From Malacoraja senta (lineage: Eukaryota), in NCBI GenBank assembly GCA_038087875.1, contig JAXLNO010002317.1, forward strand, positions 2,294,001 to 2,358,000: a stretch of 64,000 nt of DNA, in the 5' to 3' direction. A model generated the notes under the pieces. The model searched no databases, had not been told where the DNA came from, and saw only the letters and a list, made by a program, of their open reading frames with translations. The number at the start of each line of letters is the position of its first letter. Position 1 is the first letter of the stretch. This document shows positions 16,257 through 59,900 of this stretch, piece after piece. Position numbers and translations under genes: made by a program.

Positions 16257-16394
16257 GCTCTACCGCTACACCACCATGCCGCTCTTCTCCGCTCTGTACA
16301 CACCAGGTCCACAGCGCAGGATAAAAGGTGTGGAAAGTGAGTCCAGTGAACTGACAGGGTGTTCACTGCTAAAGATTGTTCCTTCTCTCCTCAG

Positions 16395-16763
16395 CCGTGA
16401 TGTCGGGACAGTGGAGAGCGGACATTCCACGAGATGTGACAGCGCAGAATGGTTTGTGTGCACGGATTCCGTGTCACTACTGGTACCCGTCGCATCTGAA
16501 CAATGAATCACGGATTGGAATCTGGTTTAACAGTGGGACGCAGAACAACAAAGGTTCTGTAGCCTTCCACTCCAGGAAATCCAATCGAGAATCAACAAAG
16601 TTTCAGCATCGGACCCGGCTGTCAGGTGTCCTGAGAGACAACGACTGTTCCCTGGTTATAGACAACATCAAGCAGCAAGATGCAGGTCCTTATTATTTCA
16701 GAGTTCATTTTGGAGTGGGCGATCGTAACAGCTACCCCAATGTAACATGGCTCAGTGTTACTG
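16395..16763 (+). CDS. Siglec-like gene: N-terminal V-set Ig domain (sialic acid binding)
   Basis: 369 nt phase 1-1 exon; W near start, GLCARIPC, DCSLVI, DAGPYYFRV with essential Arg (AGA 16700-16702), NSY aromatic; CTCAG| and |GTAAGT. Confidence 0.93.
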
Positions 16764-17816
16764 GTAAGTGCTCTGTCTAATTCACTCAACAGTTTCTTCC
16801 CAGCTGTTATCAGGCAACTGAACCATCCTACCACAACCACAGAGCAATGCTGAACTACCATCAACCTCACTGGTGACCCTCGGACTATCCTTGATCGGAC
16901 TTTGGACTGTACACGTTCCCTATTCACACACAGACCACAGCATCAGCATCCTTCTGGTTCATTTCTGGATCATCGTGACACCTCCAGTTTTTACACTGTT
17001 ATTACCAGGTTTTCATTGGCCATAAATGCTCCTAATATCGACTCCATCTACACTTCACTCAGCCTGAACTAAACTAAACAATGACTGTCTTATCCTTACT
17101 GCCCTTAGTGGAGAACTCTGTCCCCATCTTCCCGATCACAGGTCATCATAACATCGCTGGTCCCCGACCTTTTCAACCTCCCCTGACCATTGTACCTCCT
17201 TGTTCAGGGATCATCCTTGTTTAGTTAGTTAATTTTATTGCCATGTGTACCGAGGTACAGTGAAAAGCTTTTTTGTTGCGTGCTAGCCAGTCAGCGGAAA
17301 GACAATACATGATTACAATCTAGCCGTTTACAGCATATAGCTGCATGATAAGGGAATAAAGTTTAGTGCAAGGTTAAGCCAGCAAAGTCCGATCAGGGAT
17401 AGTCTGAAGGTCACCAATGAGGTAGATAGTAGTTCAGGACTGCTCTCTGGTTGTGGTAGGATGGTTCATTTGCCTGATAACAGCTGGGAAGAAACTGTCC
17501 CTGAATCTGGAGGTGTGCGTTTTCAAACCTGTACCTTTTGCCTGGTGGGTGAGGGGAGAAGAGGGAGTGACCGGGGGTGAGACTCGTCCTTGATAATCTG
17601 GAGGTGTGCGTTTTCACACTTCTATACCTCTTGCCCAATGGGAGAGAGGAGAAGAGGGAGTGGCCGGGGTGAGACTGGTCCTTGATAATCTGGAGGTGTG
17701 TGTTTTCACACTTCTATACCTTGTAAAAACATCCTTCCTCGTGTGGCACTGGGATTACAATGTGAACCGATGTATCCAGTGATATTTAACTAACAGTATC
17801 TGTTTCTCTGTGTTAG

Positions 17817-30860: not shown

Positions 30861-30927
30861 GTGTTTTACAATCCAAGGATCACCGAAAGTGCCACAAAAC
30901 ATGTTGCTGAATTTTATCTGTTTGCAG

Positions 30928-31541: not shown

Positions 31542-31670
31542 NNNNNNNNNNNNNNNNNNNNNNNNNNNNNNNNNNNNNNNNNNNNNNNNNNNNNNNNNNN
31601 NNNNNNNNNNNNNNNNNNNNNNNNNNNNNNNNNNNNNNNNNNNNNNNNNNNNNNNNNNNNNNNNNNNNNN
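31542..31670. other. Assembly gap (129 N)
   Basis: Run of N in the sequence. Confidence 1.
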
Positions 31671-40140: not shown

Positions 40141-40315
40141 CTGCACCTGTTGTCTATTGACTATTGTCTATTGAGAGTAGGAATGGGTGACGTTTCAGGT
40201 TGAGACCCTTCTTCAGGCTGGTTACATTCGTACTTCATCTTTTCTCTCCGTATTGTCCTGTTTGAAACGTGGAATTCTGCCGTGTGAACACGTTTAAACA
40301 TTTGTTTGTCTTTAG

Positions 40316-40597
40316 ATGCTCCACAGAATCTCTCAATCACTTTCCACGACGACGCGAACAGTTCCCGGGTCAGTATAAAGGAAGGAAACTCTGCGGCGAT
40401 CCTCTGCTCCATCCAGAGTTTCCCAACATCTAACCTGACGTGGAGACATCTCGGTTTCACGCTGAACACAACACGTTCCACCAACGAGCTGTGGATGGAG
40501 TTCCCTCAGCTGACACGGCAGGAAGCCGGGGTCTATCAGTGTGTGGCGGAGAATGAACACGGGACAGCAGAGAGGGATGTGACCCTCACTGTAGAAT
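40316..40597 (+). CDS. Siglec-like gene: C2/I-set exon B'
   Basis: 282 nt intact phase 1-1 exon; 8 nt differences from exon B. Confidence 0.9.
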
Positions 40598-42189
40598 GTG
40601 AGTAGACACACACTGACACATCCCTCAAAACACCATAAGGTCATAAGTGATAGGAGCAGAATTAGATTGCCGAATGACCAAGTCTACTCCGCCATTCAAT
40701 CATGGCTGATCTATCTCTCCCTCCTAACCCCATTCTCCTGCCTTCTCATTGAGCCATAGAGTTATAGAGCCATAAAGTCATAGTGATAGAGAGTCGTAGA
40801 GTGATACAGTGTGGAAACAAGCCCTTCGGCTCAACTTACTTTCAACAGCCTACATGTCTCAGGTATATTAGTCCCACCTGCCCACATTTGGCCCATATCC
40901 CTCCAAACCTGTCCTATCCATGTACCTGTCTGTTTCTTAAACACTGGGTAGACCCTGCCTCAACTACCTCCTCTGGCAGCTCGTTTCATACACCAACTAC
41001 CCTTTGTATGAAAACGCCACCACCTATATACCTATTAAATGTTTTCCCCTTTACCTTAAACCTATGTCCTCTGGTCCTCGATTCACTTACTCTGGGCAAG
41101 GGACTCTGTGCGTCTACCCGATCTATTCCTCTCATGATTTTATACACCTCTATAAGATCACCCCTCATCCTCCTGCGCTGCAAGGAATAGAGTCCCAGCC
41201 TGCTCAACCTCTCCCTATTGCTCAGGGCCTCAATTTCTGGCTACATCCTCGTAAATCTTCTCTGTACCCTTTCCTGCTTGACAACATCTTTCCTATATTT
41301 CCTCTCTCCTCTTCTAAGATGAGGAAGATTAGATCAAGTTATTTGAAGCATTGTGTGCAGTTCTGGTCACCCCATTACAGGAAGGATGTGGCCAGGGTGC
41401 AGAATGCTGCCTGGATTAGAGAGTATTAGCAATAAGGAGTTTTAAGGAGGGCTCAGTGGTTCAACGGTAGAGTTGCTGCCTCACAGCACCAGAGAGCCGG
41501 GTTCGATCATGACTACTGGTGCTTGTCTGTCGGGAGTTTGTAAGTTCACCTCATGACCTGTGTGGGTTTTCTCCAGATGCTCCGGTTTCCTCCCACACTC
41601 AAATCGGACAGGTTTGTAGGTTAATTGACTTGGTATATTTGTAAATTGTCCCTAGTGTGTGTGGGATAGTGTAAGTGTGCGGGGATCGTTGGTCGGCGCG
41701 GACATGGTGGGCCGAAGGGCATATTTACTTGCTTTATCTCTAAACTAAACTAAACTAAAGAGGTTGGAAAGATTTGTATTGTTTTCTATGGAGTTCATAA
41801 GGTCATAAGTAAAAGGAGCAGAATTAGGCCATTCGGCCCATCATGTCTACTCCGCCATTCAATCATGGCTGATCTATCTCTCCCTCCTAACCCCATTCTC
41901 CTATCTTCCCATAACCCTTGACACCCGTACTAATCAATAATCTATCTATCTCTGCCTTAAATATATCCACTGACTTGGTCTCTGCCGCCGTCTGTGGCAA
42001 TGAATTCCACAGATTCACCACCCAGTTCAAAGGCTGAGGGGAGACCTGATAGAAATATATAAAACTATGAGATGCATAGAGAAGGTAGACAGTCAGAATC
42101 TTTTTCCCATGGTGCAAATGTCAAAGTTGAGAGGGCAGAGCTTTAAGGTGAGAGGGGAAAACCGTAAAGGTGATGTGTGGGGCAAGTTT

Positions 42190-42790
42190 TACAATATGAT
42201 ACGACACGATAGAACTTTATTTAACCCAGGAGGAAATTGATTTGCCAACAGTCATAAAAACACAAAACACATGAAACATGAAATTAAAGTGACGAGTGGA
42301 GAGGCTTGGGGGATGTGCAAAGATTACGTGGGAGGTGGGTGGGGAGGGGAGTCAGTCTCAGTCTACCCCACCACAGAAGGCGGAGGAGTTGTACAGTTTG
42401 ATAGCCACAGGGAAGAAGGATATCCTGTGGCATTCTGTGCTGCATCTTGGTGAGACCAGTCTGTTGCTGAAGGTGCTCCTCAGGTTGATCAGTGTGTCAC
42501 GGAGAGGGTGAGCTGTATTGTCCAGGATGCTCCACAGATTGAGGAACATCCTCCCCTCCAAGACCACCACCGGTGAATCCAAGTCTGCCTCCAGGATGGA
42601 GCCGGCCTTCCTGATGAGCTTGTTAATCCCGTTGGTGCCCGCGGCCTTCGCCCTGCTGCCCCAGCATACGGCAGCGAAGAAGACGGCACTGGCCACCACC
42701 GATTGGTAGAACATCTGTAGCATCTTGCTGCAGATGTTGAAGGAGCAGAGCCTTCTCGGAAAGCTCTGTCCCTTCTTGTACAGGGCCTCT
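42190..42790 (-). mobile_element. Rex1/Babar LINE C-terminal fragment; related tails at 6655-7120, 17220-17720, 22630-22890, 32400-32700, 44200-45000
   Basis: ORF 42358..42810: MLQMFYQSVVASAVFFAAVCWG...SFFPVAIKLYN. Confidence 0.75.
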
Positions 42791-43291
42791 GGTTCTTGGA
42801 CCAGTCCCATTTACTGAAGATAGACACCAAATGCTGGAGTAACTCAGCGGGACAGGCAGCATCTCTGGAGAGAAGGAATGGATGAGGTTTCAGGTCGAGA
42901 CCCTTCTCCAGACTGATGGTATTTGTACAAGGTATTTGTACTCCGTGGTAAACAGCAACACGCATCTGCAACACGCTGCCAACGGCGGAGATGGAGGCAG
43001 ATAGGACAGTTCCTTCTCTCCAGAGATGCTGCCTGTCCCGCTGAGTTTACTCCAGCATTTTGCATTTGATCTCCAAGAAACATAGAAAAATAGATGCAGG
43101 AGTTGGCCATTCGGCCCTTCAAGCCAGCACCGCCATTCAATATGATCATGGCTGATCTACTAAAATCAGTACCACCGTTCCTGCTTTTTCCCCCATAATC
43201 CCTTGATTCCTTTAACCCTAAGAGCTAAATCTAACTCTCTTGAAGGTTCACAGATTCACAACTCTCTCGTGTCTTGTTCCTCCCTCTCCAG

Positions 43292-43585
43292 ATGCGCCAG
43301 AGATTTCCTGGGATTCGGGATGCACTCGCACACCTGAGAGTGTCACCTGTGTGTGTGCGGCCAGGTGCAACCCACCCGGAGAGCTCACCTGGCGCCTCCC
43401 CCTCGCCAACCTCAGCGGAAACCAAACCCGCGGACGTCCCCACACATGGCAGGTGGCCGGCGGGCATCTGGTGAATGGCTCCTTCACCCTGAGAGGGGGT
43501 GATGGAGGGGAAGACGTGACGGCCTTGTGCTCAGTCCGAAACCGACACGGGGAAGCCTTGTTCACGGTGTATCTGTCGATGGAAG
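43292..43585 (+). CDS. Siglec-like gene: membrane-proximal MAG-domain-5-like Ig domain
   Basis: 294 nt phase 1-1 exon; YAPEISWDSGC...VTCVCAARCNPPGELTW...LTLRG...ALCSVRNRHG has the C-x8-CxC-x4-NP pattern of MAG D5; TCTCCAG| and |GTGAGG. Confidence 0.88.
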
Positions 43586-45039
43586 GTGAGGACATCTCTG
43601 GGGGAGGGAAGTCATCGAGCCATAGTCATGGTCATAGTGTGTAGGAAAGAACTGCAGATGCCTCGGTTTAAATCGAAGATAGACACAAAATGCTGGAGTA
43701 ACTCAGTGGGAAAGGCAGCATCTCTGGAGAGAAGGAATGGGTGATGTTTTGGGTCGGTCTGAAGAAGGGTCTCGTCCTGAAACATAACCCATTCCATCTC
43801 TCCAGGGATGCTGCCTGTCCCTGCTGAGTTACTCCAGCAGTTGGTGTCTGACATAGTCATAGTCAGAATCATTCAGCGTGGAAACAGGCCCTTCGGCCCA
43901 ATTTGCCCACACCAGCCAACGTGCCCCATCTACACTAGTCCCACCTGCCTGCACTTGGTCCATATCCCTCCAAATCTGACCTATCCATGTACCTGTCTAA
44001 CTGCTTCATAAATGTTGGAATAGTCCCTGCCTCAACTACCTCGTCTGGCAGCATGTTCCATACACCCATGTGTGAAAAGGTTACCCCTCAGATTCCTATT
44101 AAATCTTTTCCCCCTCACCTTAAACCTATATCCTCTGCTGTCCGATTCTGTGCATCTACCCGATCTAATCCTCTCATGACTTTATACACCTCTATAAGAC
44201 CACGTTACAGTTTAGTTATTGTCATGTGTACCGAGGTACAGTGAAAAGCATTTGTTGCATGCTAACCAGTCAGCGGAAAGACTATACATGATTACAATCG
44301 AGCCATTTACAGTGTTTAGGTACATGATATGGGAATAATGTTTAATGCAAGGTAAAGCCAGCAATGTTCGGTCATGGGTAGTCCGAGGGTCACCAATGAG
44401 GTCGATAGTTCAGCACTGCTCTCTGGTTGTGGTAGGATGGTTCAAGGTGTATCTGTGGTTAGTTTAGTTTAGTTCAGTTTAATGTCACGTGTACCAAGGT
44501 ACAGTGAAAAGCTTTTGTCGCATGCTAACCGCAAGAAATTGCAGAAAGTTGTGGACGCAGCCCAGACCATCACATAAACCAACCTCCCTACCATCGACTC
44601 CATCTGTACCTCACACTGCCTCGGCAAGGCCAGCAGCATAATCAAGGACCAGTCTCACCCCGGCCACTCCGTCTTCTCCCCTCTCCCATCGGGCAAAAGG
44701 TACAGAAGTGTGAAAATGCACACCTCCAGATTCAGGGAGTTACTTTCCAGCTGTTATCAGGCAACTGAAGCATCCTACTACAACTGGAGAGCAGTCCTGA
44801 ACTACTATCTACCTCATTGGAGACCCTCGGACTACTTTGATTGGACTTTGCTGGCTTTAACTTGCACTAAATGTTATTCCCTTATCATGTATCTGTACAC
44901 TGGACGGCTCGATTGTAATCATGTATTGCCTTTCTGCTGACTGGATAGCATGCAACAAAAGCTTTTCACTGTACCTCGGTACACGTGACAATAAACTAAA
45001 CTTTAAAAACTGAAAACACACCTCTGGTTGTTCTTACAG

Positions 45040-45136
45040 GTAAGAGCTTCAGTATTTGGATCGTAGTTTTGCTTACAGCAGGGATAATACTGATCGCTGA
45101 GCTTGCTGGATTCTTCATCTACAAGTATATACAGCG
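45040..45136 (+). CDS. Siglec-like gene: transmembrane exon
   Basis: GKSFSIWIVVLLTAGIILIAELAGFFIYKYIQR; TTCTTACAG| and CG|GTAAGT (phase 1 in, phase 2 out). Confidence 0.88.
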
Positions 45137-45327
45137 GTAAGTGTAAATAAATCCACATTTATATTTTCAAATCCATCCCTTTGTCATCTGCTTCTTATGA
45201 CTGCTTCTGCCAGGCTAACTCCTGTTCATAGACACAAAGTGCTGAGGTAACTCAGCGGGTCAGGCAGCATCTCTGGAGATTAAGGAATAGGTGACATTTT
45301 GCATTGGCACATTCTTCAGACTGAAAG

Positions 45328-46369
45328 TAGCAATGTTACAAAATTTTGAGATTTAAAAAATAAAGTCTGCAATTTATCCCATCAGATAAAGCATAAAAAG
45401 AAGTTTAATTTGACACTTAATTCACTTTCATATCTTCAGTATTAAAAACGTTATGGCCATTATCATACTCAGAAATTAGCATCTAGTTCCCTATTGCTTT
45501 TCCATTGACTTAACACAAAAGCTGTGATCGAGGACAGTTAAAAGCCCATAACTTTCTTAAAAATTATGGTAACTGAAAGAAATTTTCAGGTATTATAGAT
45601 TGAAGCATTCTGAAACAAATATGAAACAATCTTACTTCGAAGACATGAAAGTAAAGCATATAATTAGTTAGTTACCTAATTGTAGCTAATTACAAAATTC
45701 AATTACTAGATCTAAACATCTATCAATTTCTTAAGAATAGATTAACATTTTTAAATAGCCTAAGTGTCCAAATAACATTCACACAATAATTCACAATATA
45801 ACATAATTTTTAATTCTAATTTTCATGAATTTACAGGCCAAATGGAAGGAATTGAATGTTTAATACCTGTAAATTAATGGGCATTTAATTCATCTTGCGA
45901 GTGAGGATTTGCTGGAACGCGATCTTTTGGAACGTTCATTTGCGGTGAATTTAACCCCGTATTGGCATGAAAAATACTGCCGTTAATTCGGGGAATAAAA
46001 TCACCGTGTCGCATGACAAAATGTGAATTAAAGGCTTCTTAAGAAGCACTTTTATACATTTAAAGAAAGCACTTTTGTTTACCTGTCCATTGTGTGAAAT
46101 CCGTCCCCGTTATTGGCGTTGACGCTTCAGGAGCTGCTTTTAAAATGACTCTAGCGCTGACATTGACGATTTAATTTTTTTTTAAAATTCACAAATCGCC
46201 GGTAGGAACGATTTTGTCAGCGAAGTTTTGTACTCCAACAAAATATTTCCAGGACAAGGGAGGAGAAACCGCGTTTTAACCCCGCCCCCCCCTTAAAGGC
46301 GCCAAAATCGCGCACACGGCCAGTGGCAGAATTACAGCGCGACTGAAGGTAAGTTTTGTAACATACCTA
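45328..46369 (+). mobile_element. Complete non-autonomous TIR DNA element (~1.04 kb)
   Basis: TIRs TAGCAATGTTACAAAA / revcomp TAGGTATGTTACAAAA; flanking direct repeat CTGAAAG (45321-45327, 46370-46376); no ORF. Confidence 0.8.
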
Positions 46370-46607
46370 CTGAAAGGTTGAGAAAGCCAGAACAAAACAG
46401 CCGGCAACAGATGACCTTTGGAGCATTGTGAGCCCTTTTGGGCCCCTATCTGAGGAATTATGTATTGGCTCTGGAGAGGGTCCAGAGGAGGTTTACGAGA
46501 ATGATCCCGGGAATGATTGGGTTAACATATGATGAGCATTCGACAGCACTGGGCCTGTACTCACTGGAGTTTAGAAGGTTGAGGGGGGACCTAATTGAAA
46601 TTTAATG

Positions 46608-47410
46608 AATAATAATAATAATACATTTTATTTATATAGCGCTTTTCAGGACTCAAAGTCGCTTTACATTGAGAGTCAAGAATAAACAAAACAAAATAGA
46701 GCAGTAAGACAGAGATGCAAAGGGGAGGGGAACATGGGACTAAGGGTATGCAGAGGTGAAGAGATGGGTCTTGAGGCGGGACTGGAAGATGGTGAGGGAC
46801 TCAGAATTTCGGATCAGTTGTGGGAGGGAATTCCAGAGCCTGGGAGCTGCCCTGGAGAAGGCTCTGCCTCCAAAAGTGCAGAGGTTTGATTTCGGAGTGG
46901 ATAGGAGACCAGCTGATGTGGATCTGAGGGACCGTGAGGGTTGGTAGGGGGAGAGGAGGTCAGTGAGATAAGGGGGGGCCAAGTGGTTGAGGGCTTTGTA
47001 GGTGAGGACCAGGATTTTGTAGATGATCCGGTGGGAAATGGGAAGCCAGTGGAGTTCTTTGAGAACTGGGGTGATGTGGTGCCAGGATTTGGTGTGGGTA
47101 ATGAGTCGGGCAGCTGCATTCTGGACCAGTTGGAGTCGGTTGATGTTGCTGGAATTGATGCCAAAGAGAAGAGAGTTACAGTAGTCCAGTCGGGAGGAGA
47201 TGAAGGCATGGATGAGTCTTTCAGCAGCGGGGGGTGTGAGAGAGGATCTGATTTTGGCAATGTTGCGGAGGTGAAAAAATGATGTTTTGACAACATGGCG
47301 GATGTGAGGCTCAAGGGAGAGTGTTGAGTCAAAGATCACGCCAAGGTTGCGTGCCTGACGAGATGGGGAGACAGTGGTGCCGTCAATAGTGAGAGTGGGG
47401 TTGTTAATTT
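46608..47410 (-). mobile_element. L2-clade LINE 3' portion inserted in a CR1 remnant
   Basis: ORF 46740..47339: HAFISSRLDYCNSLL, LQLVQNAAARL, LHWLPI, AFSRAAPRLWNSLP. Confidence 0.9.
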
Positions 47411-47890
47411 TAGTGAGTTGATTTGGAGAGTGAAAGGCTTTGAGAGAGTGGATGTAGAGAGGATGTTTCCACTAGTGGGAGAGTCTCGGACCAGAGGTCA
47501 TAGCCTCAGAATTAATGATCCTTCCTTTTGGAAGCAGATGAGAGGAATTTCTTTAGTCAGAGGGTGGTGAATCTGTGGAATTCTTTGCCGCAGAAGGCTG
47601 TCGATGCCAAGTCAATGGATATTTTTAAGGCAGAGATAGATATATTCTTGATTAGTACGGGTTTCAGGGTTTATGGGGAGATGGCAGGAGAATGGGGTTA
47701 GGAGGGAGAGTTAGATCAGCCATGATTGAATGGTGGAGTAGACTTGATGGGCCGAATGGCTTAATTCTACTCCCATCATTAATGACCGCATGATCTTATG
47801 ACCAACGTCTAATACAACTGCAACTTTGTACTTGGACTTTGCTGATGTGCAGATGTGCTGTAAATTTGGTGTGATCTTCTGTTGCTCCAG

Positions 47891-47972
47891 GAGGGAAGAT
47901 GTGACAACGGAGAAGGCTTCAGGAAACCAAGATACAAATGTGATCTACTGCCCACACTCTGCCACCAATCAG
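47891..47972 (+). CDS. Siglec-like gene: first cytoplasmic exon
   Basis: Unique island; CTCCAG| acceptor; phase 2 in, phase 0 out; (R)REDVTTEKASGNQDTNVIYCPHSATNQ; donor CAG|GTAGTG is fairly weak. Confidence 0.7.
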
Positions 47973-48529
47973 GTAGTGGAACTCTGCATTTAATCTCAAC
48001 TACAGATACAAAAGTGGGCACAAAAAGCTGGAGTAACTCAGCAGGACAGGCAGCATCTCTGGAGGTACATGGATAGGACGGGTTTGGAGGGATATGGACC
48101 AAGCGCAGGCAGGTGGGACCAGTGCAGCTGGGACATGTTGGCCGGTGTGGGCAAGTTGGGCCGAAGGACTTGTTTCCACACTGTATCACTATGACTCTAT
48201 ATGGACGATAATGTAGAGAGATAAAGAACAATGAATGAAAGATATGCAAATATAGTAACGATAATAAAGGAAGCAGGCCACTGTTAGCGGTTTGTTGGTT
48301 GAAAATGAGAAGCTAGTGCGGCTTGGGTGGGGGAGGGATGGAAAGAGAGAGAAATCAATGTGCATATCACTGGGCTGTAAGCTGCACAAGTGAAATATGA
48401 GATGCTGTTCCTCCAATTTGCATTTAGGCCTCACTCTGACAATGGAAGAGACCGAGGACAGAAAGGTCAGTGTGAGAATGGGAAGGAGAATTAAAGTGTA
48501 CAGCAACCGGGGTATGAATATTGATTTCT

Positions 48530-48690
48530 CTGTGTGAGTGGGAGAGAGAGAGAGAGTGGGTGTGAGTGTGAGAGAAAGTTTGAGAGAGGGAGACAGTGCG
48601 AGAGGGGGAGAGAGTGTGAAACTGCAAGTGTGAGAGAGTGTGTGAGTGTGTGAGAGAAAGAGAGGAGAGAGAGAGAGTGTGAGAGGAGAA
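48530..48690. repeat. (GA)n/(GT)n mixed microsatellite; a (CA)/(CT) tract also at 22275-22370
   Basis: Direct reading. Confidence 0.9.
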
Positions 48691-48832
48691 CATAAACAAC
48701 ATGCCTGAACCTGGGTGTGTGGGAGTTCAGGAGTTGTGAACCTTGTCGCTGATGGTAATTAAATGTCAGGCCACACCGTGCACTGCTCTGTACTAAACCC
48801 ACAACTGCCCGTCTGCTTCCCTTTCCTTCCAG

Positions 48833-49023
48833 AGCGCGGGGAGTGGAGAGGACGGGCCGGCCCCAGAGGAGCTGAAAGGAGGAGGGGAACCGGAGAGGGG
48901 GAAGAGCGAGCGGTCGTGTACGCCAGCCTGCGGGAGTTGCCGAGCAGCGGAGACACTGTGCACAACGGCGAGGGGGTGGAATACGCTGAGCTCTGGTTCC
49001 AGTCCAAGCAGGGGGAGGGGTAG
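48833..49023 (+). CDS. Siglec-like gene: terminal cytoplasmic exon with two ITIMs (VVYASL, VEYAEL); frame conflict at G5 run 48897-48901
   Basis: TACTAAAC branch-like motif, CTTTCCTTCCAG| acceptor; Tyr codons 48919-48921 and 48982-48984; stop TAG 49021-49023. Confidence 0.75.
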
Positions 49024-52000
49024 GAGGGAGGGGCGTGAGGAGGGAGGGCCGTGCTGTGGCAGGGGTGATGGGGAGGGAGGGGCGATGGGGAGGGAGCGCT
49101 GCACCAGCCTTAACTACCTTGGGTTTCATAGATTAATTAACCCTCTGTATAGGAGATAGTGGGATAGCATAGAACTAATGTGTGAACGAATGATCGATGG
49201 TCGGTGGGCTGAAGGGCCTGTTTCCACACTGTATCTCTAAACTAAACATAGAACTAATTTAAGAGATTTAAGATAGTTAGATAGAGCTCTAGGGGCTAAT
49301 GGATTCAAGGGATATGGGAAGAAGGAAGGCACGGGTTATTGATTGTGGACGATCAGCCATGATCACAATGAATGGCGGTGCTGGCTCGAAGGGCCGAATG
49401 GCCTCCTCCTTCACCTATTTTCTATGTAACTATTGTGCGAACGGATGATCGATGGTCGGTGCAGACATGGTGGGCCGAAGGGCCTGTTTCCGTGCTGTAT
49501 CTCTTAAAAAAGCCTTTGTTTCTTTAGAACAGACTGTTCCGGGTAACTATTGACATTGACAATAATTGCTTCTATTGACACTGGTCAAATGATAGTCTGT
49601 TAAACATACAGTCTTTACCTGCAGTTACAAAATAGACTTGTAGCTATTAAATGAAGACCTTTAGTTTTTGAAAATCCGGTGGGATTTTTGCTAATGCTCT
49701 TGTGAAACTCTGAAGCCCCCTCTTGCTCTTGTAGCGCCATGTTCTATAACAAGTTTCATAGCAAGCAGCTCTCTGTGCGGCATTGGTGAGTAATAATAAT
49801 AATGAAATACAGACGCTGGAAATCTGACAAAGGGCAGCACGGTGGCACAGTGGTAGAGTTGCTGCCTCACATGCGCCAGAGACCCGGGTTTGATCCTGAC
49901 CATGGGTGCTGTCTGTGCGGAGTTTGTACGTTCTCCGCGTGGATTTTCTCCGGGATCTTCGGTTTCCCCCCACACTCCAAAGACAGGCAGGTTTGTAGGT
50001 TAATTGGCTTGGTGTAAATGTAAATGGTCCCTGGTGTGTGTAGTGTGCGGGGATCACTGGTCGGTGCTGACTCAGTGGGCCGAAGGTCCTGTTTCAGCAC
50101 TGTGTCTCTAAACTACACTAAACTAAAACTAATCAGTCATGGTCATCCAATAGTGGAGCAGGTGTAAGATTAATCCTGATACTATTTTTATATCATTACA
50201 TGTTTTCTGCAGAGGATTTGGATTTGTTGCATTTGTAAACAAAGAGATTAAAATGCTAAACCATCACATGTCTCAGAATTATGTTTTAAACATCTCTTTT
50301 ATTTGATTTTTGGTCTGCTAATTTGAGGAAGGACATTCTTGCTATTGAGGGAGTGCAGCGTAGGTTCACCAGATTAATGCCCGGGATGGCGGGACTGACA
50401 TATGATGAAAGAATGGATCAACTGGGCTTGTATTCACTGGAATTTAGAAGGATGAGAGGATATCTTATAAAACATATAAAATCCTTAAGGGATTGGACAG
50501 GCTAGATGTAGGAAAAAAGTTCCCGATGTTGGGGGGAGTCCAGAACCAGGGGTCACAGTTAGGTCATTTGGGACTGAGATGGGGAAAATCATTTTCACCC
50601 AGGGAGATGTGAATCTGGGAATTCTCTGCCACAGAAGGCAGTGGGGGCCAATTCACTGGATGTTTTCAAGAGATAGATTTAGCTCTTTGGGCTAACGGAA
50701 TTAAGGGATATGGGGAGAAAGCAGGAATGGGATACTGATTTTGGATGATCAGCCGTGATCATATTGAATGGCGGTGCTGGCTGGAAGGGCAGAATGGCCT
50801 ACTCCTGCACCTATTTTCTATGTTTCCGCGCTGTATCTCAACTAAACTAAAGCCTTCCTATTACATTCCCATCTGAATATCTTGTAAAAGTCACGATTGT
50901 GTCCTTTCTAGAGCTTTTTTTAAAATTTCAAAATATACTTTATTTGAGAAATAAATATATCCAATACATGATCCTTACAAGACTCCATCCAACAATCTCG
51001 GAGGCTATACATACATTCAATAATGTTTACACAAATTACACAAATTTATCCCCCATCCTTGCCACTCATGTGGCCCACTGGCGTGGAATCCCTTCCCTTA
51101 TTTTTGAGGGGCATCTCCACCACACCCTGCCCCCCATGTCCAGCAGCGGAAGGACCCTAGGCTGTGGTCCCCATCGTCTTTTTTTAAATTATCAAAAAAT
51201 TTAATCAATTATTAAAAATAATATTTACAATACAATGAAACAAAACAGAACCCACCACCATAATACAAGACCAACAAATATACTAAATAAACTACTGTAC
51301 ACCTATGTTACACTCCTTGTCAAGGATGCATTCAACCCACCGCGGTGCCCAGTGGTCCTGGAAATCTCCCAGGGTGCCCGTGGACAGGGCGTACTCCCTC
51401 TCTAACACCACCCGGGCAAGGACGTAACCCCTGAAAAGGGGCAGGCATCTGGCTCGGGCAGAGCCCTCTTCCGCCTGGCACCGTGACTCGCGGATGGCCA
51501 GCTTGGCCAGGCCCAGGAGCAACCCAACCAGGACATCTTCAGCCCTACCCTCTCCCTTACGCACAGGGTGTCCAAAGATGAAGATGGTGGGTGAGAAATG
51601 CAGCCAGAAGGCAAGGAGCAGCCCCTTTAGATATTGGAACAGACTGCAGCCTCACACACTCCATATAAACATGGTACACAGATTCTTCCTGCCCGCAAAA
51701 GTGGCAGGCGGCTGGCGAGTCTGTGAACCGCGAGAGAAACAGGTTGCAGGGGACTCCTCGGTGCAATACCCTCCACCCCAGCTCCCCGATGTAGAGGGGG
51801 AGAATCCCTGTGTAGAGGGACCCCCCCCCCCCACCCCCACCGAGCCTTGGCGTTTGCTGCACCAAGCTTCAGTGCATCCCTCAGCATGTACTCCTGCAGT
51901 CTGCAGCAGGCCAGTCGGCAACATTCCCCAACGGACATCTCACTCCGCTGGGAGGTCAACAAAGCTCGGGCAGCCCAAAGAGCGTCTTTCACCGCCTTTC

Positions 52001-53288
52001 ACCGAGTTGATGACCTTCTAGCAGCACTCGATGTCAGTATCTGAATGCGTCGCTGGGACCCTTGCAGACCTCTCCAGGCTGTCTTTGCAAATCCACACAC
52101 TGCAAAGAGGTGGGCAAACATAGCAGCCATCCCGAGGGCAGCGTGCGCTGGTAGAGGTTCCGACGGTGAAGGAAGGATCTGACTGGGAGGGCTCCCCTCA
52201 CCGCCAACCAAACCAGATCGTGGTGCTTGTTGGTGAGTTGTGGCGATGAGGCATTTCGCCAGACAAGCTGGGCAGTCTGCTCTGGGATCCACGCCACAGG
52301 TTCCATGGAGTTATTTCCCTGCAGTGCCTGCAGGACGTTCCGTGCTGACCACTGCCTGTTGGACTTGTGGTCAAAGGTGTTGGTCCAGAAGAACCTTTCC
52401 ATGAACGATAGATGTCCAGCTGACTGGCACATTACGTGGCATCTGCGCCAGGCCCATCCTTCGCAACACCGGGGACAGGTAGAACCTCAGCAGGTAGTGA
52501 CACTTGGTGCCCACGTGCCTTGGCTCTACGCTCTGCCTGATGCAGCCACACATGAAGGTGGCCATCAGGGTGAGGGTGACGTTGGGCACACTTTTACCCC
52601 CGTGTCTGCCGACTTGTGCATTGTGGCCCGTCGCACCCGGTCTATCCTCGACCCCCAGATGAACTGGAATTCGGCCTTGGTGATCCCTGTGGCGTAGGAG
52701 GGAGGGACAGGCCACACTTGCGCCACGTACAGCAACCCCGAGAGCACCTCACACCTGATGACCAAGTTCTTTCTCGTTATAGAGAGGGAGCGTTGCTTCC
52801 ACAGCTCCAGTTTATTCCCCACCCTTGGCTATCCGCACCAGCCAATTCTTGTCACATGCCTCAGCCCCCCGAACCAGATCCCCAGCACCTTCAAGAAGTC
52901 AGGCTTGATGGTGAAGGGGACGGAAGATCGGTCGGGCCAGTTGCCAAAGAGCAAGGCCTCGCTCTTCCTGCGGTTCACCCTGGCTCCTGTGGCCGACTCA
53001 AACTGGTCGCAGATGCTAATCAATCTGCGGACCGACCCTGGATCCGAGCAGAAGACGGCGACATCGTCCATGTACAGGGAGGTTTTGACCCGAGTGCCCC
53101 CACTGCCTGGCAATGTCACTCCTCTTATGCTCGTGTCCTTCCTGATGGACTCGGCAAAAGGTTCAATACAACAGACAAACAAGACAGGGGAGAGAGGGCA
53201 ACCCTGCCTGACTCCAGACCTGACGGGGAAGCTGTCTGATTCCCACCCATTGATTTGGACTGCGCTACAGATATCAGTGTAGAGCAGT

Positions 53289-53395
53289 CTGAACCTTCAG
53301 TCTGAGGAAGGGTTTCGGCCCGAAACGTTGCCTATTTCCTTCGCTCCATAGATGCTGCTGCACCCGCTGAGTTTCTCCAGCATTTTTGTGTACCT
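53289..53395 (+). mobile_element. 107 bp Penelope-tail insert with hammerhead motif inside Tx1 ORF2
   Basis: 15 bp TSD TCAGTGTAGAGCAGT (53274-53288, 53396-53410); CTGAGGA-A-GGGT(TTCG)GCCC-GAAA-CGTT at 53302-53329. Confidence 0.8.
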
Positions 53396-55307
53396 TCAGT
53401 GTAGAGCAGTTGGATCCAATTCCTGATTCCCTCCCCAAAGCCCATTTTGGAGAGCACGTCCCTCATGTACGTGTGCGATATCCTGTTGAAGGGCTTCTCC
53501 TGGTCCTAACTGACTAGGCAGGCATCCACCTGTCTGTCCTGCACATAGGCAATGGTATCTGTCAGCAGCGTCAGGCTGTCTGAGATATTTCTGCAAGATA
53601 CAGGAACAGGTGGATCACCCGTCCCAGAGCAGACTTGACCCGGTTGGCGATGGCCTTGGACAGGATCTTGTAATCAACATTCAACAATGTGATAGGTCTC
53701 CAATTCCTTATGTCATTCATCTCCCCCTTCTGCTTGTAGATTAGGGTGATGCTGCCCTTCCTCATAGAGTCTGACATGCTGCCGGCTAGAAGCATGTCAT
53801 TGTACACTTCCAGCAGGTCCGGGCCCACCCAGTCCCACTGAGCCGAATACAACTCGGCCGGTAAGCCATCGCTTCTGGGAGTTTTACTCAACTCAAAGGA
53901 ATGGATGGAGCCAGTCAGCTCCTCTAGGGTCAGTGGTTGGTCCAGACTCTCCCGCTTGCTGTTCTCCAAGACCTCCGTGGTAGAGGACAGGAAGTTCTGG
54001 GAGGCGGTGCTGTCTGTGGCCTTTCTGTCGTACAAATCCGTATAAAAGGATGTGCAGATCCTCAGCATGTCCGTCTGCAAGGATGTTACCGAGCCGTCCT
54101 CCTCCCTAAGGCTGTTGGTCACAGAGCTCCCCCTGTGAACCTTATGGAAGAAGAAGCGTGAGCACGTCTCATCCTGCTCCACGTGGCGGACCCTGGATCG
54201 GAAGATGGTCTTGGAGGATATGGAGGTAAAGAGCCGAGTTTGCCGGCCCTTCAACTCTCAAAGTTCCTCCCTCACATCCACCCCTCTCGACTGCAGAAGG
54301 AGCAGAAGTTGCTACAAATCTGTCTGGAGTTGACACAATTCCCTCTGACTCTGTCTTGCTCTCTGAACCCCTTTAGATATGAAGAACCTCTTGATGTTCT
54401 CATTGGTTGATTCCCACCAGTGTGTCGGGGAGTCAAAGAGGGGCCTCACCGATCTCCAACATGCGTAGTCCCTCTTTAACTCCTCAATGTTCTCTGGGGT
54501 CAACAGCTTCACATTGAACTTCCACGTCCCCCTGCCTGCCTTCCGGTCCTCCTGTAGGTGACAGGAAGCCTGAAGGAGGCAGTGGTCAGAGAAGAACACC
54601 GGCGTGAGGTCGGTGTGTCTCACCGTGACGGCCTTCGATGTGAAGAGGAAGTCTATCCGGGACCGGGCTGAACCGTCCGATCTCGACCAGGTGAACCGCG
54701 ACTGGGACCCGCCTGCAGGGTGGCTGAAGGCGTCGCGCAACTTTGCGTCTTTGACCGTCTCCATCAGGAGCTTGGAGGTGCTGTCCAGTCTGTGATCGGC
54801 ACTGCCCGATCGTCCAGCCGCATCGATGATGCAGTTGAAGTCACCGGTCAGAACGAGCGACCGGGACGTGGCCAGCAGTGGTGGGAGCTGCTGGAGAACG
54901 GCCAGCCGCTCGCTCTGCACGGGTGAGGCGTACACATTAATCAGCCGGAGCGGAGAGCCACGTTACATTACATCCACCACCAGGTGACGGCCCCTTCCCC
55001 CCAACCACCTCCCTGACCTCAGTGATGGCGAAGCTCCCTCCCGCAGCAAGATCCCCAGACCGGAAGCGCGACAGTCATTGCCCCCCGACCACACCGACAG
55101 TCCGTGGGGCCACCATCGCGACCACCTCTGATAGCCGTGGAGGTGTGGCAGCCCGCACTCCTGCAGAATAGTCACATCTGCCTCGACCTTGGGCAGGTAC
55201 TGCAAGGTGTTTACACATCGCGCAGTGTTCTTCACACTGCGCACGTTTAGCGATGCCAGTTTTAGCTCCATTGTCCTTAAAAAGTCACTGATCGTCATCT
55301 TGTCCTA

Positions 55308-56425
55308 GATACATAGATACATAGAAAATAGGTGCAGGAGTAGGCCATTCGGCCCTTCGAGCCTGCACCGCCATTCAATATGATCATGGCTGATCATCCA
55401 ACTCAGTATCCCGTACCTGCCTTCTCTCCATACCCCCTGATCCCTTTAGCCACAAGGGCCACATCTAACTCCCTCTTAAATATAGCCAATGAACTGGCGT
55501 CAACTACCCTCTGTGGCAGAGAGTTCCAGAGATTCACCACTCTCTGTGTGAAAAAGTTTTTCCTCATCTCGGTCTTAAAGGATTTCCCCCTTATCCTTAA
55601 GCTGTGACCCCTTGTCCTGGACTTCCCCAACATCGGGAACAATCTTCCTGCATCTAGCCTGTCCAACCCCATAAGAATTTTGTACGTTTCTATAAGATCC
55701 CCTCTCAATCTCCTAAATTCTAGCGAGTATAAGCCAAGTCTATCCAGTCTTTCTTCATATGAAAGTCCTGACATCCCAGGAATCAGTCTGGTGAACCTTC
55801 TCTGCACTCCCTCTATGGCTATAATGTCCTTCCTCAGATTTGGAGACCAAAACTGTACGCAATACTCCAGGTGTGGTCTCACCAAGACCCTGTACAACTG
55901 CAGTAGAACCTCCCTGCTCCTATACTCAAATCCTCTTGCTATGAAGGCCAACATACCATTCGCTTTCTTCACTGCCTGCTGCACCTGCATGCCTACTTTC
56001 AATGACTGGTGTACCATGACACCCAGGTCTCGCTGCACCTCCCCATTTCCTAATCGGCCACCATTTAGATAATAGTCTGCCTTCCCGTTTTTGCCACCAA
56101 AGTGGATAACCTCACATTTATCCACATTATACTGCATCTGCCAAACATTTGCCCACTCACCCAGCCTATCCAAGTCACCTTGCAGTCTCCTAGCATCCTC
56201 CTCACAGCTAACACTGCCCCCCAGCTTAGTGTCATCCGCAAACTTGGAGATGTTGCTTTCAATTCCCTCGTCCAGATCATTAATATAAATTGTAAATAGC
56301 TGGGGTCCCAGCACTGAGCCTTGCGGTACCCCACTAGTCACTGCCTGCCATTGTGAAAAGGACCCGTTTACTCCTACTCTTTGCTTCCTGTTTGCCAGCC
56401 AGTTCTCTATCCACATCAATACTCT
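55308..56425 (-). mobile_element. 5'-truncated CR1 LINE nested between Tx1 ORF1 and ORF2
   Basis: Uninterrupted ORF 55403..56428 (RT C-terminal half); same tail and subfamily as the CR1 at 19166. Confidence 0.92.
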
Positions 56426-56577
56426 CATGCCACCGCTTTGGTGAATTGTAGCATCGTTTCTGGGCTCAGGTACTGGGTGCCGGCATCCTCAAGGAGGGGG
56501 TCTCCTCTGGCATGGCTGGAGTTGTTGTCAGAGGGACCCTCCTTGTTCCACCCTCTTCCGGGCGCACCGCCCCCTCC

Positions 56578-56970
56578 GTCTCCTGTAGCTGGGGTACGGT
56601 GGCTGGTTCATTGCTCCCGGTCTCCCGGAGCTGGGGCACATTGGCCGCTGCACTGCTCCCGGTCTCCCGGAGCTGGGGCCCATTGGCCGCTGCACTGCTC
56701 CCGGTCTCCCGGAGCTGTGGCCCATTGGCCGCTGCACTGCTCCCGGTCTCCCGGAGCTGGGGCCCATTGGACGCTGCATTGCTCCCGGTCTCCCGGAGCT
56801 GTGGCCCATTGGCCGCTGCACTGCTCCCGGTCTCCCGGAGCTGGGGCCCATTGGACGCTGCACTGCTCCCGGTCTCCCGGGGCTGTGGCCCATTGGCCGC
56901 TGCACTGTTCCCGGTCTCCTGGAGCTGGGGCCCATTGGCCGCTGCACTGTTCCCGGTCTCCTGGAGCTTG
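56578..56970 (-). repeat. 42 bp coding minisatellite in Tx1 ORF1 (8 full + 1 degenerate units)
   Basis: ORF 56466..57362 reads (RETGSSAAANGPQL)n. Confidence 0.9.
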
Positions 56971-59900
56971 GGGACAACAGGCGTGTCCTTTCCCTTTCCG
57001 ATCTCCTCACCCGTTTTCTTCCTCTGCCTCCAACGTGGGGTCCTCGATGTCGCCTCATCCTCTGACGAGGAGAGGTTGCTGCCGTCGGTCTGGGAGAGGA
57101 CTCTTTTCTTGGACTTTCCCGTTCCCTCCGGCCTTGGCTCTTTGGGCAGAGCCCTCTGGTCTTTCCTACTTTTCACCACCTGCCATTGCCTCCTCCTGTT
57201 CCCCTTCTTCCATCGACTCTCCCTCCTGGACAGGGGGCTGGGGGTCTCTGTCCGGCGGTTGGGGGCTGGAGGTGGTCGGGCTGTCCTCATCCCTGTTCTC
57301 TCTTTCTGCTGGGGTCTAGGCAGTGGTGGCAAGCGTCTCGCCCACCCTGGGGGTGTTGGCATCAGCTCCTCTTATTGCCTGTGTTTAGGTGCAGGCTCTT
57401 TTAGAGCAGGCCCTGTAGAGGTGGCCTGCCTCCCCGCACAGGCTGCAGTTCTTGCTGACTTGGCAGTCCTTTGTCTCGTGAGCTTCGTTCCCCTTCTCCC
57501 GGAAGTCTTGCATTAGCTTCTGCCATCCCGTTGGATACTTGAAAGTGACATCAAAGTATCCGTTACAAGGGAAGTCCTGGAGACAGTACATGTCTTCGGC
57601 CTCAAATTTGCAGGCCTCCAGCAAGACCTTCCTGACGAACTGGTCCCGTGAGAAAGGAGTCCCCTCGCTGAGGTCCTTCATGCTCACTCGCAGGGTATTG
57701 CAATTCCCTGTCAATAGACAATAAACAAAAGGCAATAGACAATAGACAATAGACAATAGGTGCAGGAGTTGGCCCTTCGTCCCTTCGAGCCAGCACCGCC
57801 ATTCAATGTGATCATGGCTGATCATCCACAATCAATACCCCGTTCCTGCCTTCTCCCCATATCCCCTGACTCCGCTATCTTTAAGAGCTCCATCTAACTC
57901 TCTCTTGAAAGCATCCAGAGAATCAGCCTCCACTGCCTTATGAGGCAGGGAATATGACAGATTCACAACTCTCTGGCTGAAAACATTTTTCCTCATCTCA
58001 GTTCTAATTGGCCTACCTTTATTCTTAAACTGTGGCCCCTGGTTCTGGACTCCCAAAACATCTGGAACTTGCTGCCTGCATCTAGCGTGTCCAATCCCCT
58101 AATAATCTTTTATGTCTCAATAAGATCCCTTCTCATCCTACCCAATTCCAGAGTATACAAGCTCAGCCGCTCCATTCACTCAACATATAACAGTTCCGCC
58201 ATACCGGGAATTAACATCGTGAACCTACGCTGCACTCCCTCAATAGCAAAAATGTCCTTCCTCAAATTAGGAGACCAAAACTATGTCCCCTGGTCCTCGA
58301 TTCCCCTACTCTGGGCAAGAGATTCTGTGCGTCTACCTGATCTATTCCTCTCATGATTGTGTACACCACTATAAGATGACCCCTCATCCTCCTGCAATCC
58401 AAGGAGTAGAGTCCCGGCCTACTCAACCTGTCCCCACAGCTCACACCCTCGAGTCCTGGCAACATCCTCGTAAACATTTGATATTTTCCCAACGTAGCCC
58501 GGTCCCATCACACAAACCAACCTCACCACCCCTATCGACTCTAATTGGGCCCCATATCTGACGAAGTATGTGCCCGCTCTGGAGAGGGTCCAAGGAGATT
58601 TACAAAAATGATTCCAGGAATGAGTTGGTTAGCGTATGATGAGCATTTTTGACGGCACTGGGCCTGTACCCACTGGCGTTTAGAAGGTTGAGGGGGGGAC
58701 CACATTTAAATGTACAGAATAGTGAAAGGCCTGCATAGAGTGGATGTGGAAAGGATGTTTCCACTTGTGGGAGAGTCTAGGACCAAGCTCAAGTTCAAGT
58801 GAGTTTATTGTCGTGTGTCCCTGATAGGACAATGAAATTCTTGCTTTGCTTCAGCACACAGAACATAGTAGGCATTGCCTCAGAATTAAAGGGCGCTCTT
58901 TTAGAAAGGAGATGAGGAGCAATTTCTTTAGTCAGAGTGTAGTGAAAATGGAATTATTTACGGCAGAGGGCAAGTCAGTGGATATTTTTTAGGCAGAGAT
59001 AGACAAAATCTTCATTAGAACGGGTGTCAAGGGTTATGGGGAGAAGGCAGGAAAATGGGATTGGGAGGCCGAGATCGGCCATGATTCAATGGGGGAATAG
59101 GCTCGATGGGCCGAATGGCCTAATTCTACTCCTATAACGTGAACTTGCAACTCCATCTCCACTTCACGCTGCCTCGGGAAAACTACCAACATACTCAAGG
59201 ACCGCTCACACCACAGCCATTCCCCCTTCTCCCCTCTCCCATCGGGAGGCATGTTGGTGCAGCGGTAGAGTTGCTGCCTTACAGCGAATGCAGCACCGAA
59301 GACCCAGGTTCGATCCCGACTACGGGTGACAATAGACGATAGACAACAGGTGCAGGAGTAGGCCATTCGGCCCTTCGAGCCAGCACCACCATTCAATGTG
59401 ATCATGGCTGATCATCCCCAATCAGTACCCCGTTCCTGCCTTCTCCCCATATCCCCTAACTCCATATCTTTAAGAGCCCTATCTAGCTCTCTCTTGAAAG
59501 TATCCAGAGAACCTGCCTCCACCGCCCTCTGAGGCAGAGAATTCCACAAACTCACAACTCTCTGTGAGAAAATGTGTTTCCTCGTCTCTATTCTAAATGG
59601 CTTACCCCTTATTCTTAAACTGTGGCCCCTGGTTCTGGAATCCCCCAACATCGGGAACATGTTTCCTGCCTCTAGAGTGTCCAAATCCTTAATAATCTTA
59701 TATGTTTCAAAAAGATCCCCTCTCATCCTTCTAAACTCCAGACTACACAAACCCAGCCGCTCCATTTTCTCAGCATATGACAGTCCCACCCATCCTGGGA
59801 ATTAACCTTGTAAACCTACGCTGCACTCCCTCAGCGTAGGACTGAGTATAGGTGCTGACTATACGGAACTTGTACGTTCTTCCCGTGACCGGCATGGGTT

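What the first reader, a model, noticed from the sequence alone, without database searches (positions are those of the whole stretch)
48833..49159. Both ITIMs are one base out of frame at a G homopolymer
Seen: the preceding exon ends in phase 0, and from the strong acceptor (48833) the frame reads SAGSGEDGPAPEELKGGGEPERG. It then misses VVYASL and VEYAEL and runs ~108 codons to TAG 49157-49159. One extra G in the run 48897-48901 gives PERGEERAVVYASL...VEYAEL*. Known: CD33-related Siglecs use the same 2-then-0 cytoplasmic phase pattern (from recall). Options: homopolymer assembly error, a real ITIM-null allele, a tandem acceptor 2 nt downstream (CAG-AG, 48835) acting as a splice switch, or a missed micro-exon.
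Basis: partly seen in the sequence, partly recalled or inferred. Interest (0 to 1): 0.7.

Follow-up and report, generated by a model that had tools for sequence, protein, structure and literature searches.

The report
Skate Siglec tail: ITIMs frameshifted
The last exon of a skate sialic-acid receptor (Siglec) gene lacks one G compared with its closest relative, so as assembled the receptor loses both inhibitory (ITIM) motifs; this is either a recent real loss or a one-base assembly error, and sequencing reads are needed to tell which.

Summary
The gene is a Siglec: V-set exon with the sialic-acid arginine, C2 and repeated Ig exons, TM exon 45040-45136, 82-nt cytoplasmic exon 47891-47972 ending in phase 0, last exon from 48833. 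From that acceptor the frame misses VVYASL (48913-48930) and VEYAEL (48976-48993) and stops at 49157-49159. The ITIM frame is open from the acceptor to TAG 49021-49023 and matches the conserved tail of 18 stingray Siglecs.

The closest copy, in Amblyraja radiata, has GGG where the window has GG (48892-48893), and G5 at 48897-48901 in both. With GGG the acceptor frame runs straight into the conserved GEGEE-x3-VYAxL. A stingray profile also favours a shift at or before 48892 by about 4-5 bits.

The same exon order and phases (2, then 0) occur in the sawfish gene and in the NCBI A. radiata model, so no micro-exon is needed. The AG at 48833-34 would restore the frame, but GAG is a poor acceptor.

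The A. radiata copy has lost its ITIMs by other lesions: a TAA stop, at which its NCBI model ends, and its own 1-nt deletion.

Real deletion versus assembly error cannot be settled here: about 0.48 versus 0.40. This is of modest interest and a known kind of event in Siglecs.

The parts
16373..16777 (+). V-set exon of the Siglec gene (open frame that contains it); holds GPYYFRV with the sialic-acid arginine
   Evidence: Pfam V-set 44.5 bits and Ig_CD22 31.7 bits, both above cut-off.
43292..43585 (+). Membrane-proximal Ig exon, phase 1/1
   Evidence: It was the query, which recovered the batoid Siglec homologues.
45040..45136 (+). Transmembrane exon, 97 nt, ends in phase 2; derived Glu codon GAG at 45099-45101
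   Evidence: A. radiata has GTG and the sawfish GTA at the Glu codon.
47891..47972 (+). Cytoplasmic exon, 82 nt, REDVTTEKASGNQDTNVIYCPHSATNQ, ends CAG|GT in phase 0
   Evidence: The sawfish has the same 82-nt exon and donor. The A. radiata model uses it too, with an in-frame 15-nt deletion.
48833..48892 (+). Start of the last exon, read in the acceptor frame (SAGSGEDGPAPEELKGGGEP)
   Evidence: The NCBI A. radiata model XP_032870579.1 reads the same frame (SAGSGENGPAPVEQKGGG*).
48833..48834 (+). Second AG of CAGAG; if used as acceptor (exon from 48835) the ITIM frame is restored
   Evidence: the frame from 48835 is open to 49020. The -3 base would be G, a disfavoured acceptor context (established splice-site consensus).
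48892..48893 (+). Inferred site of the missing base: GG here, GGG in A. radiata
   Evidence: alignment A1; HMM score falls from 47.7-49.1 to 42.8-44.5 bits for shifts placed after 48892.
48897..48901 (+).
48913..48930 (+). ITIM 1, VVYASL, out of frame with the acceptor
   Evidence: stingray homologues: PVYASL/PVYANL.
48976..48993 (+). ITIM 2, VEYAEL, same frame as ITIM 1, 21 residues Tyr to Tyr as in the stingrays
49021..49023 (+). Stop codon of the ITIM frame (ancestral stop)
   Evidence: conserved TAG in A. radiata.
49157..49159 (+). Stop codon of the frame as assembled
   Evidence: The equivalent frame in A. radiata is closed much earlier.

Best explanation
The window carries a batoid Siglec gene whose ancestral last exon was read from the CAG acceptor (48833) straight through GEGEE, ITIM 1 and ITIM 2 to TAG 49021-23. 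In this sequence one G is missing from an ancestral GGG (now GG, 48892-93).

Read as a real germline change, fixed or polymorphic, it has these consequences. The mRNA would splice normally. It should escape nonsense-mediated decay because the change lies in the last exon. The product would be a receptor with an intact ectodomain and membrane anchor. Its tail would switch after 20 codons of the last exon into an unconserved 88-residue reading without ITIMs, so it could not recruit SHP phosphatases through them.

Shown here: the frame break, its position relative to the closest copy, the homology of the ITIM frame, and the exon phases. Inferred: that the base is missing in the animal, the fate of the transcript, and the loss of signalling. 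The loss would be recent, because the ITIM frame is still intact.
For: - Frame break and phases.
- Alignment with the collinear A. radiata locus L003: GG versus GGG, G5 equal in both.
- In A. radiata the acceptor frame is continuous with GEGEEQAAVYANL.
- Stingray profile: best scores for a shift at 48872-48892, 4-5 bits lower inside the G5 run.
- The sawfish gene has the same exon structure and phase-0 junction.
- Signs that this gene lineage tolerates ITIM loss: the A. radiata copy has an independent TAA stop, a substitution at which its NCBI model ends, plus its own 1-nt deletion between the ITIMs.
- Tail dN/dS between the two copies is 0.98.
- The window's TM carries a derived Glu caused by a substitution.
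- The missing base lies in a 3-base run, which is short for a homopolymer error.
Against: - Both ITIMs, their spacing and the ancestral stop are intact.
- The three tail differences that can be polarised against stingrays (L, P, G) are all ancestral in the window. The tail therefore looks constrained until very recently, as an assembly error would also predict.
- The exon is 47% G.
- Other first-stage notes on this genome report several homopolymer-linked frameshifts in otherwise conserved genes (unchecked).
- No reads, no transcripts and no second skate orthologue with this tail could be reached.
Confidence: 0.48

Rival explanations
1. Assembly error. The animal has GGG at 48892-93, and the gene encodes a normal inhibitory Siglec with two ITIMs. 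The consensus dropped one G in a very G-rich stretch.
For: - The ITIM frame is fully open and scores 47.3 bits against the stingray tail profile.
- The ITIMs, the Tyr-Tyr spacing and the stop are all conserved.
- All other coding exons of the gene that I checked are open.
- The exon is 47% G with many G runs.
- First-stage notes elsewhere in this genome list homopolymer frameshifts in conserved genes (unchecked).
Against: - The affected run is only 2-3 bases, while the neighbouring G5 run is unchanged.
- The sister copy in A. radiata shows that ITIM loss does happen in this gene (a nonsense substitution).
- The derived intramembrane Glu points to altered constraint in this copy.
Confidence: 0.4
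2. Splice rescue. The base is really missing, but some or most transcripts use the AG at 48833-34 (exon from 48835). That reads RGEWRGRAGPRGAERRRGTGEGEERAVVYASL... and keeps both ITIMs.
For: - The frame from 48835 is open from the acceptor to the ancestral stop.
- The 20 residues it would replace are poorly conserved among skate, stingray and sawfish, so a changed linker might be tolerated.
Against: - The second AG sits 2 nt after a CAG with an excellent pyrimidine tract and would have G at -3, the least used acceptor context (established consensus).
- The same CAGAG exists in A. radiata, where the first AG gives the ITIM-1 frame and is the one used in the NCBI model.
- The stingray profile slightly prefers the acceptor frame up to PEEL (49.1 versus 47.3 bits).
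Confidence: 0.08
3. Missed micro-exon or a different upstream exon that changes the phase entering the last exon.
For: None found; it is only arithmetically possible.
Against: - The sawfish gene (DNA checked) joins the 82-nt exon directly to the last exon in phase 0. So do the A. radiata model and all 18 stingray proteins (...TTPQ|DTERQR...).
- Joining the TM exon directly to 48833 gives a frame with an early stop (frame from 48834).
Confidence: 0.03

Closest known systems
Batoid Siglec genes with a two-ITIM tail, known from automatic annotation only (for example Mobula birostris 'myelin-associated glycoprotein-like' P0006, Mobula hypostoma 'Siglec-10' P0084, Pristis pectinata XP model P0008)
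   Same: The V-set/C2/Ig ectodomain and the AGFFIYKYI membrane anchor are shared. So are the 82-nt cytoplasmic exon ending ...Q in phase 0, and a last exon with GEGEE-x3-VYA(S/N)LRELP...Y(A/S)EL.FQS.
   Different: In those proteins the tail is in one frame. Here one base is missing between the acceptor and GEGEE.
Amblyraja radiata XP_032870579.1 'sialic acid-binding Ig-like lectin 6' (P0100, locus L003)
   Same: It is the closest copy. It is collinear with the window over about 18 kb, from window 40314 to 58000, at 82-91% identity. It has the same TM, cytoplasmic and last exons, and the same CAGAG acceptor.
   Different: It is ITIM-less by other lesions: TAA at the position of window 48887-89, G4 instead of G5 at the position of 48972-76, and a 15-nt in-frame deletion in the 82-nt exon. 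It keeps GGG where the window has GG.
Polymorphic frameshift and pseudogene alleles of primate CD33-related Siglecs (SIGLEC12 frameshift; SIGLEC11/SIGLEC16 inhibitory/activating pair with SIGLEC16P)
   Same: Small lesions remove full-length or inhibitory signalling from a Siglec while the gene stays recognisable. This is described as typical of the fast turnover of these genes (abstracts of PMC7876704 and PMC5701461).
   Different: Those are mammalian genes with population and expression data. Here there is one assembled sequence of a skate, no reads, and orthology to the CD33-related group is untested.
Short-tailed activating partners of inhibitory Ig receptors (for example activating KIR; from my own knowledge, not tested here)
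   Same: The ITIM-coding sequence survives downstream of a stop or frameshift, and there is a charged residue in or at the membrane span.
   Different: No basic TM residue in the window: it has Glu, and the A. radiata Lys lies at the outer edge of the span. No adaptor is known, and the out-of-frame tail is long rather than short.

Membership tests
Siglec (sialic acid-binding Ig-like lectin) | N-terminal V-set domain with the conserved arginine on strand F (Y-F/Y-F-R) in place of the usual Y-x-C | tested here: met
   Exon 16373-16777 encodes ...DAGPYYFRVHF. Pfam V-set scores 44.5 bits and Ig_CD22 31.7 bits, both above cut-off.
Siglec (sialic acid-binding Ig-like lectin) | Three-cysteine pattern in the V-set (B-E intrasheet pair plus one interdomain Cys), followed by C2-set domains | tested here: met
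   The V exon has GLC, IPC and NDC and no Cys after YYF. The next exon hits Pfam C2-set_2 at 40.1 bits. The assignment of the disulfides themselves is inferred.
Siglec (sialic acid-binding Ig-like lectin) | Binds sialylated glycans | not testable with these tools
   Needs recombinant ectodomain and a glycan array.
ITIM-bearing inhibitory receptor | (I/V/L/S)-x-Y-x-x-(L/V/I) in the cytoplasmic tail, in frame with the transmembrane segment | tested here: not met
   VVYASL and VEYAEL fit the consensus. However, as assembled and with the strong acceptor, they lie in the +2 frame relative to the TM and cytoplasmic exons.
ITIM-bearing inhibitory receptor | Ancestral tail homologous to functional ITIM tails of relatives | tested here: met
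   The ITIM frame scores 47.3 bits against an HMM of 18 stingray tails. The 21-residue Tyr-Tyr spacing is the same.
CD33-related Siglec subgroup | Orthology or phylogenetic grouping with the mammalian CD33-related genes; proximal ITIM plus distal ITIM-like motif | not tested
   No tree was built and no mammalian sequences were used. Database names of the relatives vary (MAG-like, Siglec-5/6/7/10/13, CD22-like) and are automatic.
Activating paired receptor | Basic residue (K/R) inside the TM that pairs with an ITAM adaptor, and a short tail without ITIM | tested here: not met
   The window's TM has Glu, not Lys or Arg. The out-of-frame tail has 88 residues. Adaptor pairing cannot be tested here.

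The most novel reading that the evidence does not exclude
The missing G is real and is part of a recurrent pattern. One batoid inhibitory Siglec has been turned into an ITIM-less receptor independently in two skate lineages: by a frameshift here, and by a nonsense codon plus a frameshift in A. radiata. Each copy also gained a charged residue in or at the membrane span (Glu 45099-45101 here; Lys in A. radiata). That would be an early-vertebrate example of inhibitory receptors being converted into decoy or activating partners.
Probability: 0.18. Interest if true: 0.55.

Novelty: new member of a known kind. Interest (0 to 1): 0.3.

Why it matters
If the deletion is real, this skate has a Siglec that still binds its ligand but has lost its inhibitory signalling motifs. 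Its counterpart in another skate lost the same motifs in a different way. That would place the birth-and-death and tail-swapping dynamics known from mammalian Siglecs and KIRs in cartilaginous fish as well.

If it is an assembly error, the practical lesson concerns annotation. The gene should be annotated as an ordinary two-ITIM inhibitory Siglec, and G-rich exons in this assembly need read-level checking before any pseudogene is called.

Tried and rejected
- Paralogues in the window: the tail and the 82-nt exon are unique there, so there is no internal comparison.
- A. radiata locus L002 (P0002): it shares the V, C2 and Ig exons but has no TM or tail within 10 kb downstream, so it gave nothing for the tail.
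- Rhinoraja longicauda locus L004: it has a different tail type and no match to this exon.
- Protein search with the 86-aa open frame around the ITIMs: blank. This is uninformative because of the length window.
- Search with the sawfish tail: found only itself.
- Stingray DNA as a nucleotide outgroup: the Mobula file is too large, and the Hypanus protein is not on record. Polarisation therefore rests on protein alignments only.
- Micro-exon hypothesis: rejected on homologue structure.
- A conserved new tail in the shifted frame: rejected, because the equivalent frame in A. radiata is closed early.
- Lys in the A. radiata TM as a clear activating signature: downgraded, because the sawfish has Arg at the same juxtamembrane position in an ITIM-bearing protein.
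- Literature on elasmobranch Siglecs: none found in the library.

Full report
**What is there**

The window is vertebrate DNA rich in CR1/LINE and SINE remnants. Its closest matches are skate and ray genomes. On the + strand lies one long Siglec gene, with these parts:
- A V-set exon inside the open frame 16373-16777. It encodes GPYYFRVHF, the Siglec arginine motif, and hits Pfam V-set and Ig_CD22 above cut-off.
- A C2-set exon near 17783-18100.
- Several near-identical Ig exons: 27490-27804, 30918-31214 and 40288-40602, plus one split copy at 19022-19165 / 22051-22206.
- A unique membrane-proximal Ig exon, 43292-43585, phase 1/1.
- A transmembrane exon, 45040-45136, 97 nt, ending in phase 2.
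- An 82-nt cytoplasmic exon, 47891-47972, which therefore ends in phase 0 at CAG|GT.
- A last exon behind a strong pyrimidine tract, with acceptor AG at 48831-32.

**Check of the observation**

- The frame from 48833 reads SAGSGEDGPAPEELKGGGEPERGKSERSC... and runs 108 codons to TAG 49157-59.
- The run at 48897-48901 is G5.
- The +2 frame reads RGEWRGRAGPRGAERRRGTGEGEERAVVYASLRELPSSGDTVHNGEGVEYAELWFQSKQGEG and stops at 49021-23.

The two motifs are VVYASL at 48913-48930 and VEYAEL at 48976-48993. Both fit the ITIM consensus.

**Are the ITIMs real remnants?**

A search of protein representatives with the membrane-proximal Ig exon was followed by a tail-directed search. Together they gave 18 stingray and manta Siglec models with one conserved tail:
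...TTPQ|DTERQRTSQIPQEVSPVMPVGEGEECGPVYASLRELPGGGGPVRRGETVIYAELHFQSIGPA

An HMM of their last exons scores the window's ITIM frame at 47.3 bits. The other two frames score 0.9 and 0.3 bits. The Tyr-Tyr spacing of 21 residues is the same. The homology is therefore beyond doubt.

**Is the gene model right?**

For the sawfish homologue (P0008, locus L001) I checked the DNA. The TM exon ends in phase 2. An 82-nt exon ends ...CAT CAG|GT in phase 0. The last exon starts at TTTACAG|GAT GGG in phase 0. The stingray proteins show the same junction. So the 2-then-0 pattern and the direct junction are conserved in batoids, and no micro-exon is called for.

**Where is the base missing?**

The decisive comparison is locus L003 of Amblyraja radiata, the gene of XP_032870579.1 (P0100). 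It is collinear with the window from 40314 to 58000 at 82-91% identity. It contains the TM exon, the 82-nt exon and the last exon.

In the alignment of the last exon, the 43 intron bases before the acceptor and the CAGAG are identical. The window reads GAACC-GGAGAGGGGG where A. radiata reads TAATCGGGAGAGGGGG. The G5 run has five G's in both. The difference is GG (48892-93) against GGG.

With GGG the acceptor frame runs directly into GEGEEQAAVYANL. The conserved GEGEE of the stingrays is thus encoded across the G5 run in the ITIM frame (GGA GAG GGG GAA GAG).

As an independent test, I placed an N at every position of the exon and scored each reading against the stingray HMM. Positions 48872-48892 give 47.7-49.1 bits. 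Positions after 48892 give 44.5 bits. Positions within the G5 run give 42.8-43.9 bits.

**Polarity**

The ITIM tail is conserved between skates and stingrays, so the skate ancestor must have had a continuous frame. Two arrangements would give one:
- the CAG acceptor with GGG, as in A. radiata;
- the AG at 48833-34 with GG.

The second needs a GAG acceptor 2 nt behind a perfect CAG. That context is strongly disfavoured (established splice-site consensus). It is not the site used in the A. radiata or sawfish models. I therefore take GG as the derived state, or as an error.

**The sister copy has also lost its ITIMs, but differently**

The A. radiata copy carries three lesions in this region:
- TAA where the window has GAA (48887-89). 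The NCBI model ends there...SATNQSAGSGENGPAPVEQKGGG.
- G4 where the window has G5 (48972-76). This puts ITIM 2 out of frame with ITIM 1.
- A 15-nt in-frame deletion in the 82-nt exon.

None of these lesions is shared with the window.

Between the two copies the tail has 13 non-synonymous and 4 synonymous differences, giving dN/dS of 0.98. The membrane-proximal Ig exon gives 0.69.

Three tail differences can be polarised against the stingrays (L, P and G in RELP...NGEG). All three are ancestral in the window. Most of the decay therefore seems to lie on the A. radiata side, and the window's tail looks constrained until recently.

**Real or artefact?**

In favour of a real change:
- The run is short (2-3 bases).
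- The neighbouring G5 run is unchanged.
- The sister gene shows that ITIM loss is tolerated in this lineage.
- The window's TM has a derived intramembrane Glu, GAG at 45099-45101. A. radiata has GTG and the sawfish GTA. A base substitution of this kind is not a typical assembly artefact.

In favour of an assembly error:
- The ITIM frame is untouched.
- The exon is 47% G.
- Other first-stage notes on this genome list several homopolymer-linked frameshifts in conserved genes (unchecked).

I cannot reach reads or transcripts. My odds are about 0.48 for a real deletion, 0.40 for an assembly error, 0.08 for rescue by the second AG as the main route, and the rest for other explanations.

**Consequences if real**

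The change lies in the last exon, so the message should escape nonsense-mediated decay (inference). The protein would keep its ectodomain and membrane anchor. After 20 residues of the last exon it would carry 88 unconserved residues.

The equivalent frame in A. radiata is closed early, so there is no sign that the new tail is selected. The receptor would lack ITIM-dependent inhibition and might act as a decoy. An activating role is speculative, because the TM charge is acidic rather than basic.

**Comparison with what is known**

Small frameshifts and pseudogene alleles are well known in primate Siglecs. Examples are the polymorphic SIGLEC12 frameshift (PMC7876704) and the SIGLEC11/16 pair with SIGLEC16P (PMC5701461), both from abstracts listed. 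Activating receptors with ITIM remnants behind a stop are known from KIRs (my own knowledge).

I found no paper on elasmobranch Siglecs in the library. The batoid genes exist only as automatic models with inconsistent names.

This is therefore at most a new member of a known kind of event, and possibly no biological event at all.

Noticed in passing
window 45099-45101: Glu codon (GAG) inside the membrane span (IILIAELAGFF). It is derived: A. radiata has GTG (Val), the sawfish GTA (Val) and the stingrays Leu at this position.
   Followed up: partly
L003:22374-22571 (A. radiata): The closest copy of the tail exon has its own ITIM-disabling lesions: a TAA stop used by the NCBI model, and a 1-nt deletion between the ITIMs. 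There is also a 15-nt in-frame deletion in the preceding exon (L003 about 21018) and a Lys at the outer edge of the TM (SIWKAVLL).
   Followed up: yes
window 19022-19165 and 22051-22206; L003:11168-11358 and 11802-11919: The first repeated Ig exon of the window is split at about codon 54 by about 2.9 kb of inserted DNA. In A. radiata the homologous exon is split at a different place, about codon 71, by about 440 nt. These phase-1/1 exons seem to be hit repeatedly, and they can be skipped without a change of frame.
   Followed up: partly
window 49020-49100; L002:7100-9000: A G-rich GGGAGGG-type repeat lies directly 3' of the ancestral stop. The out-of-frame tail reads through it. A long tandem array of the same kind lies upstream of the A. 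radiata paralogue L002.
   Followed up: no
window 15575-15629: Candidate leader exon (MLLALWTLATRDALLVPG, donor GGA|GTGACG, phase 1) about 750 nt upstream of the V-set exon. It was found by pattern only.
   Followed up: no
L002 (A. radiata CM021408.1:6648974-6688645): A second A. radiata paralogue has V, C2 and Ig exons 84-93% identical to the window's at the DNA level, but no TM or tail exon within 10 kb downstream. Its NCBI model (193 aa) ends by reading into the intron.
   Followed up: partly
window 53571-56428 (- strand) and 38685-39752 (+ strand): Long reverse-transcriptase and endonuclease open frames of LINE elements flank the gene. No conserved host gene was seen in 50-64 kb that could serve as a check on assembly quality.
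   Followed up: no
window 31542-31670: A run of 129 N in the intron after Ig exon 30918-31214.
   Followed up: no
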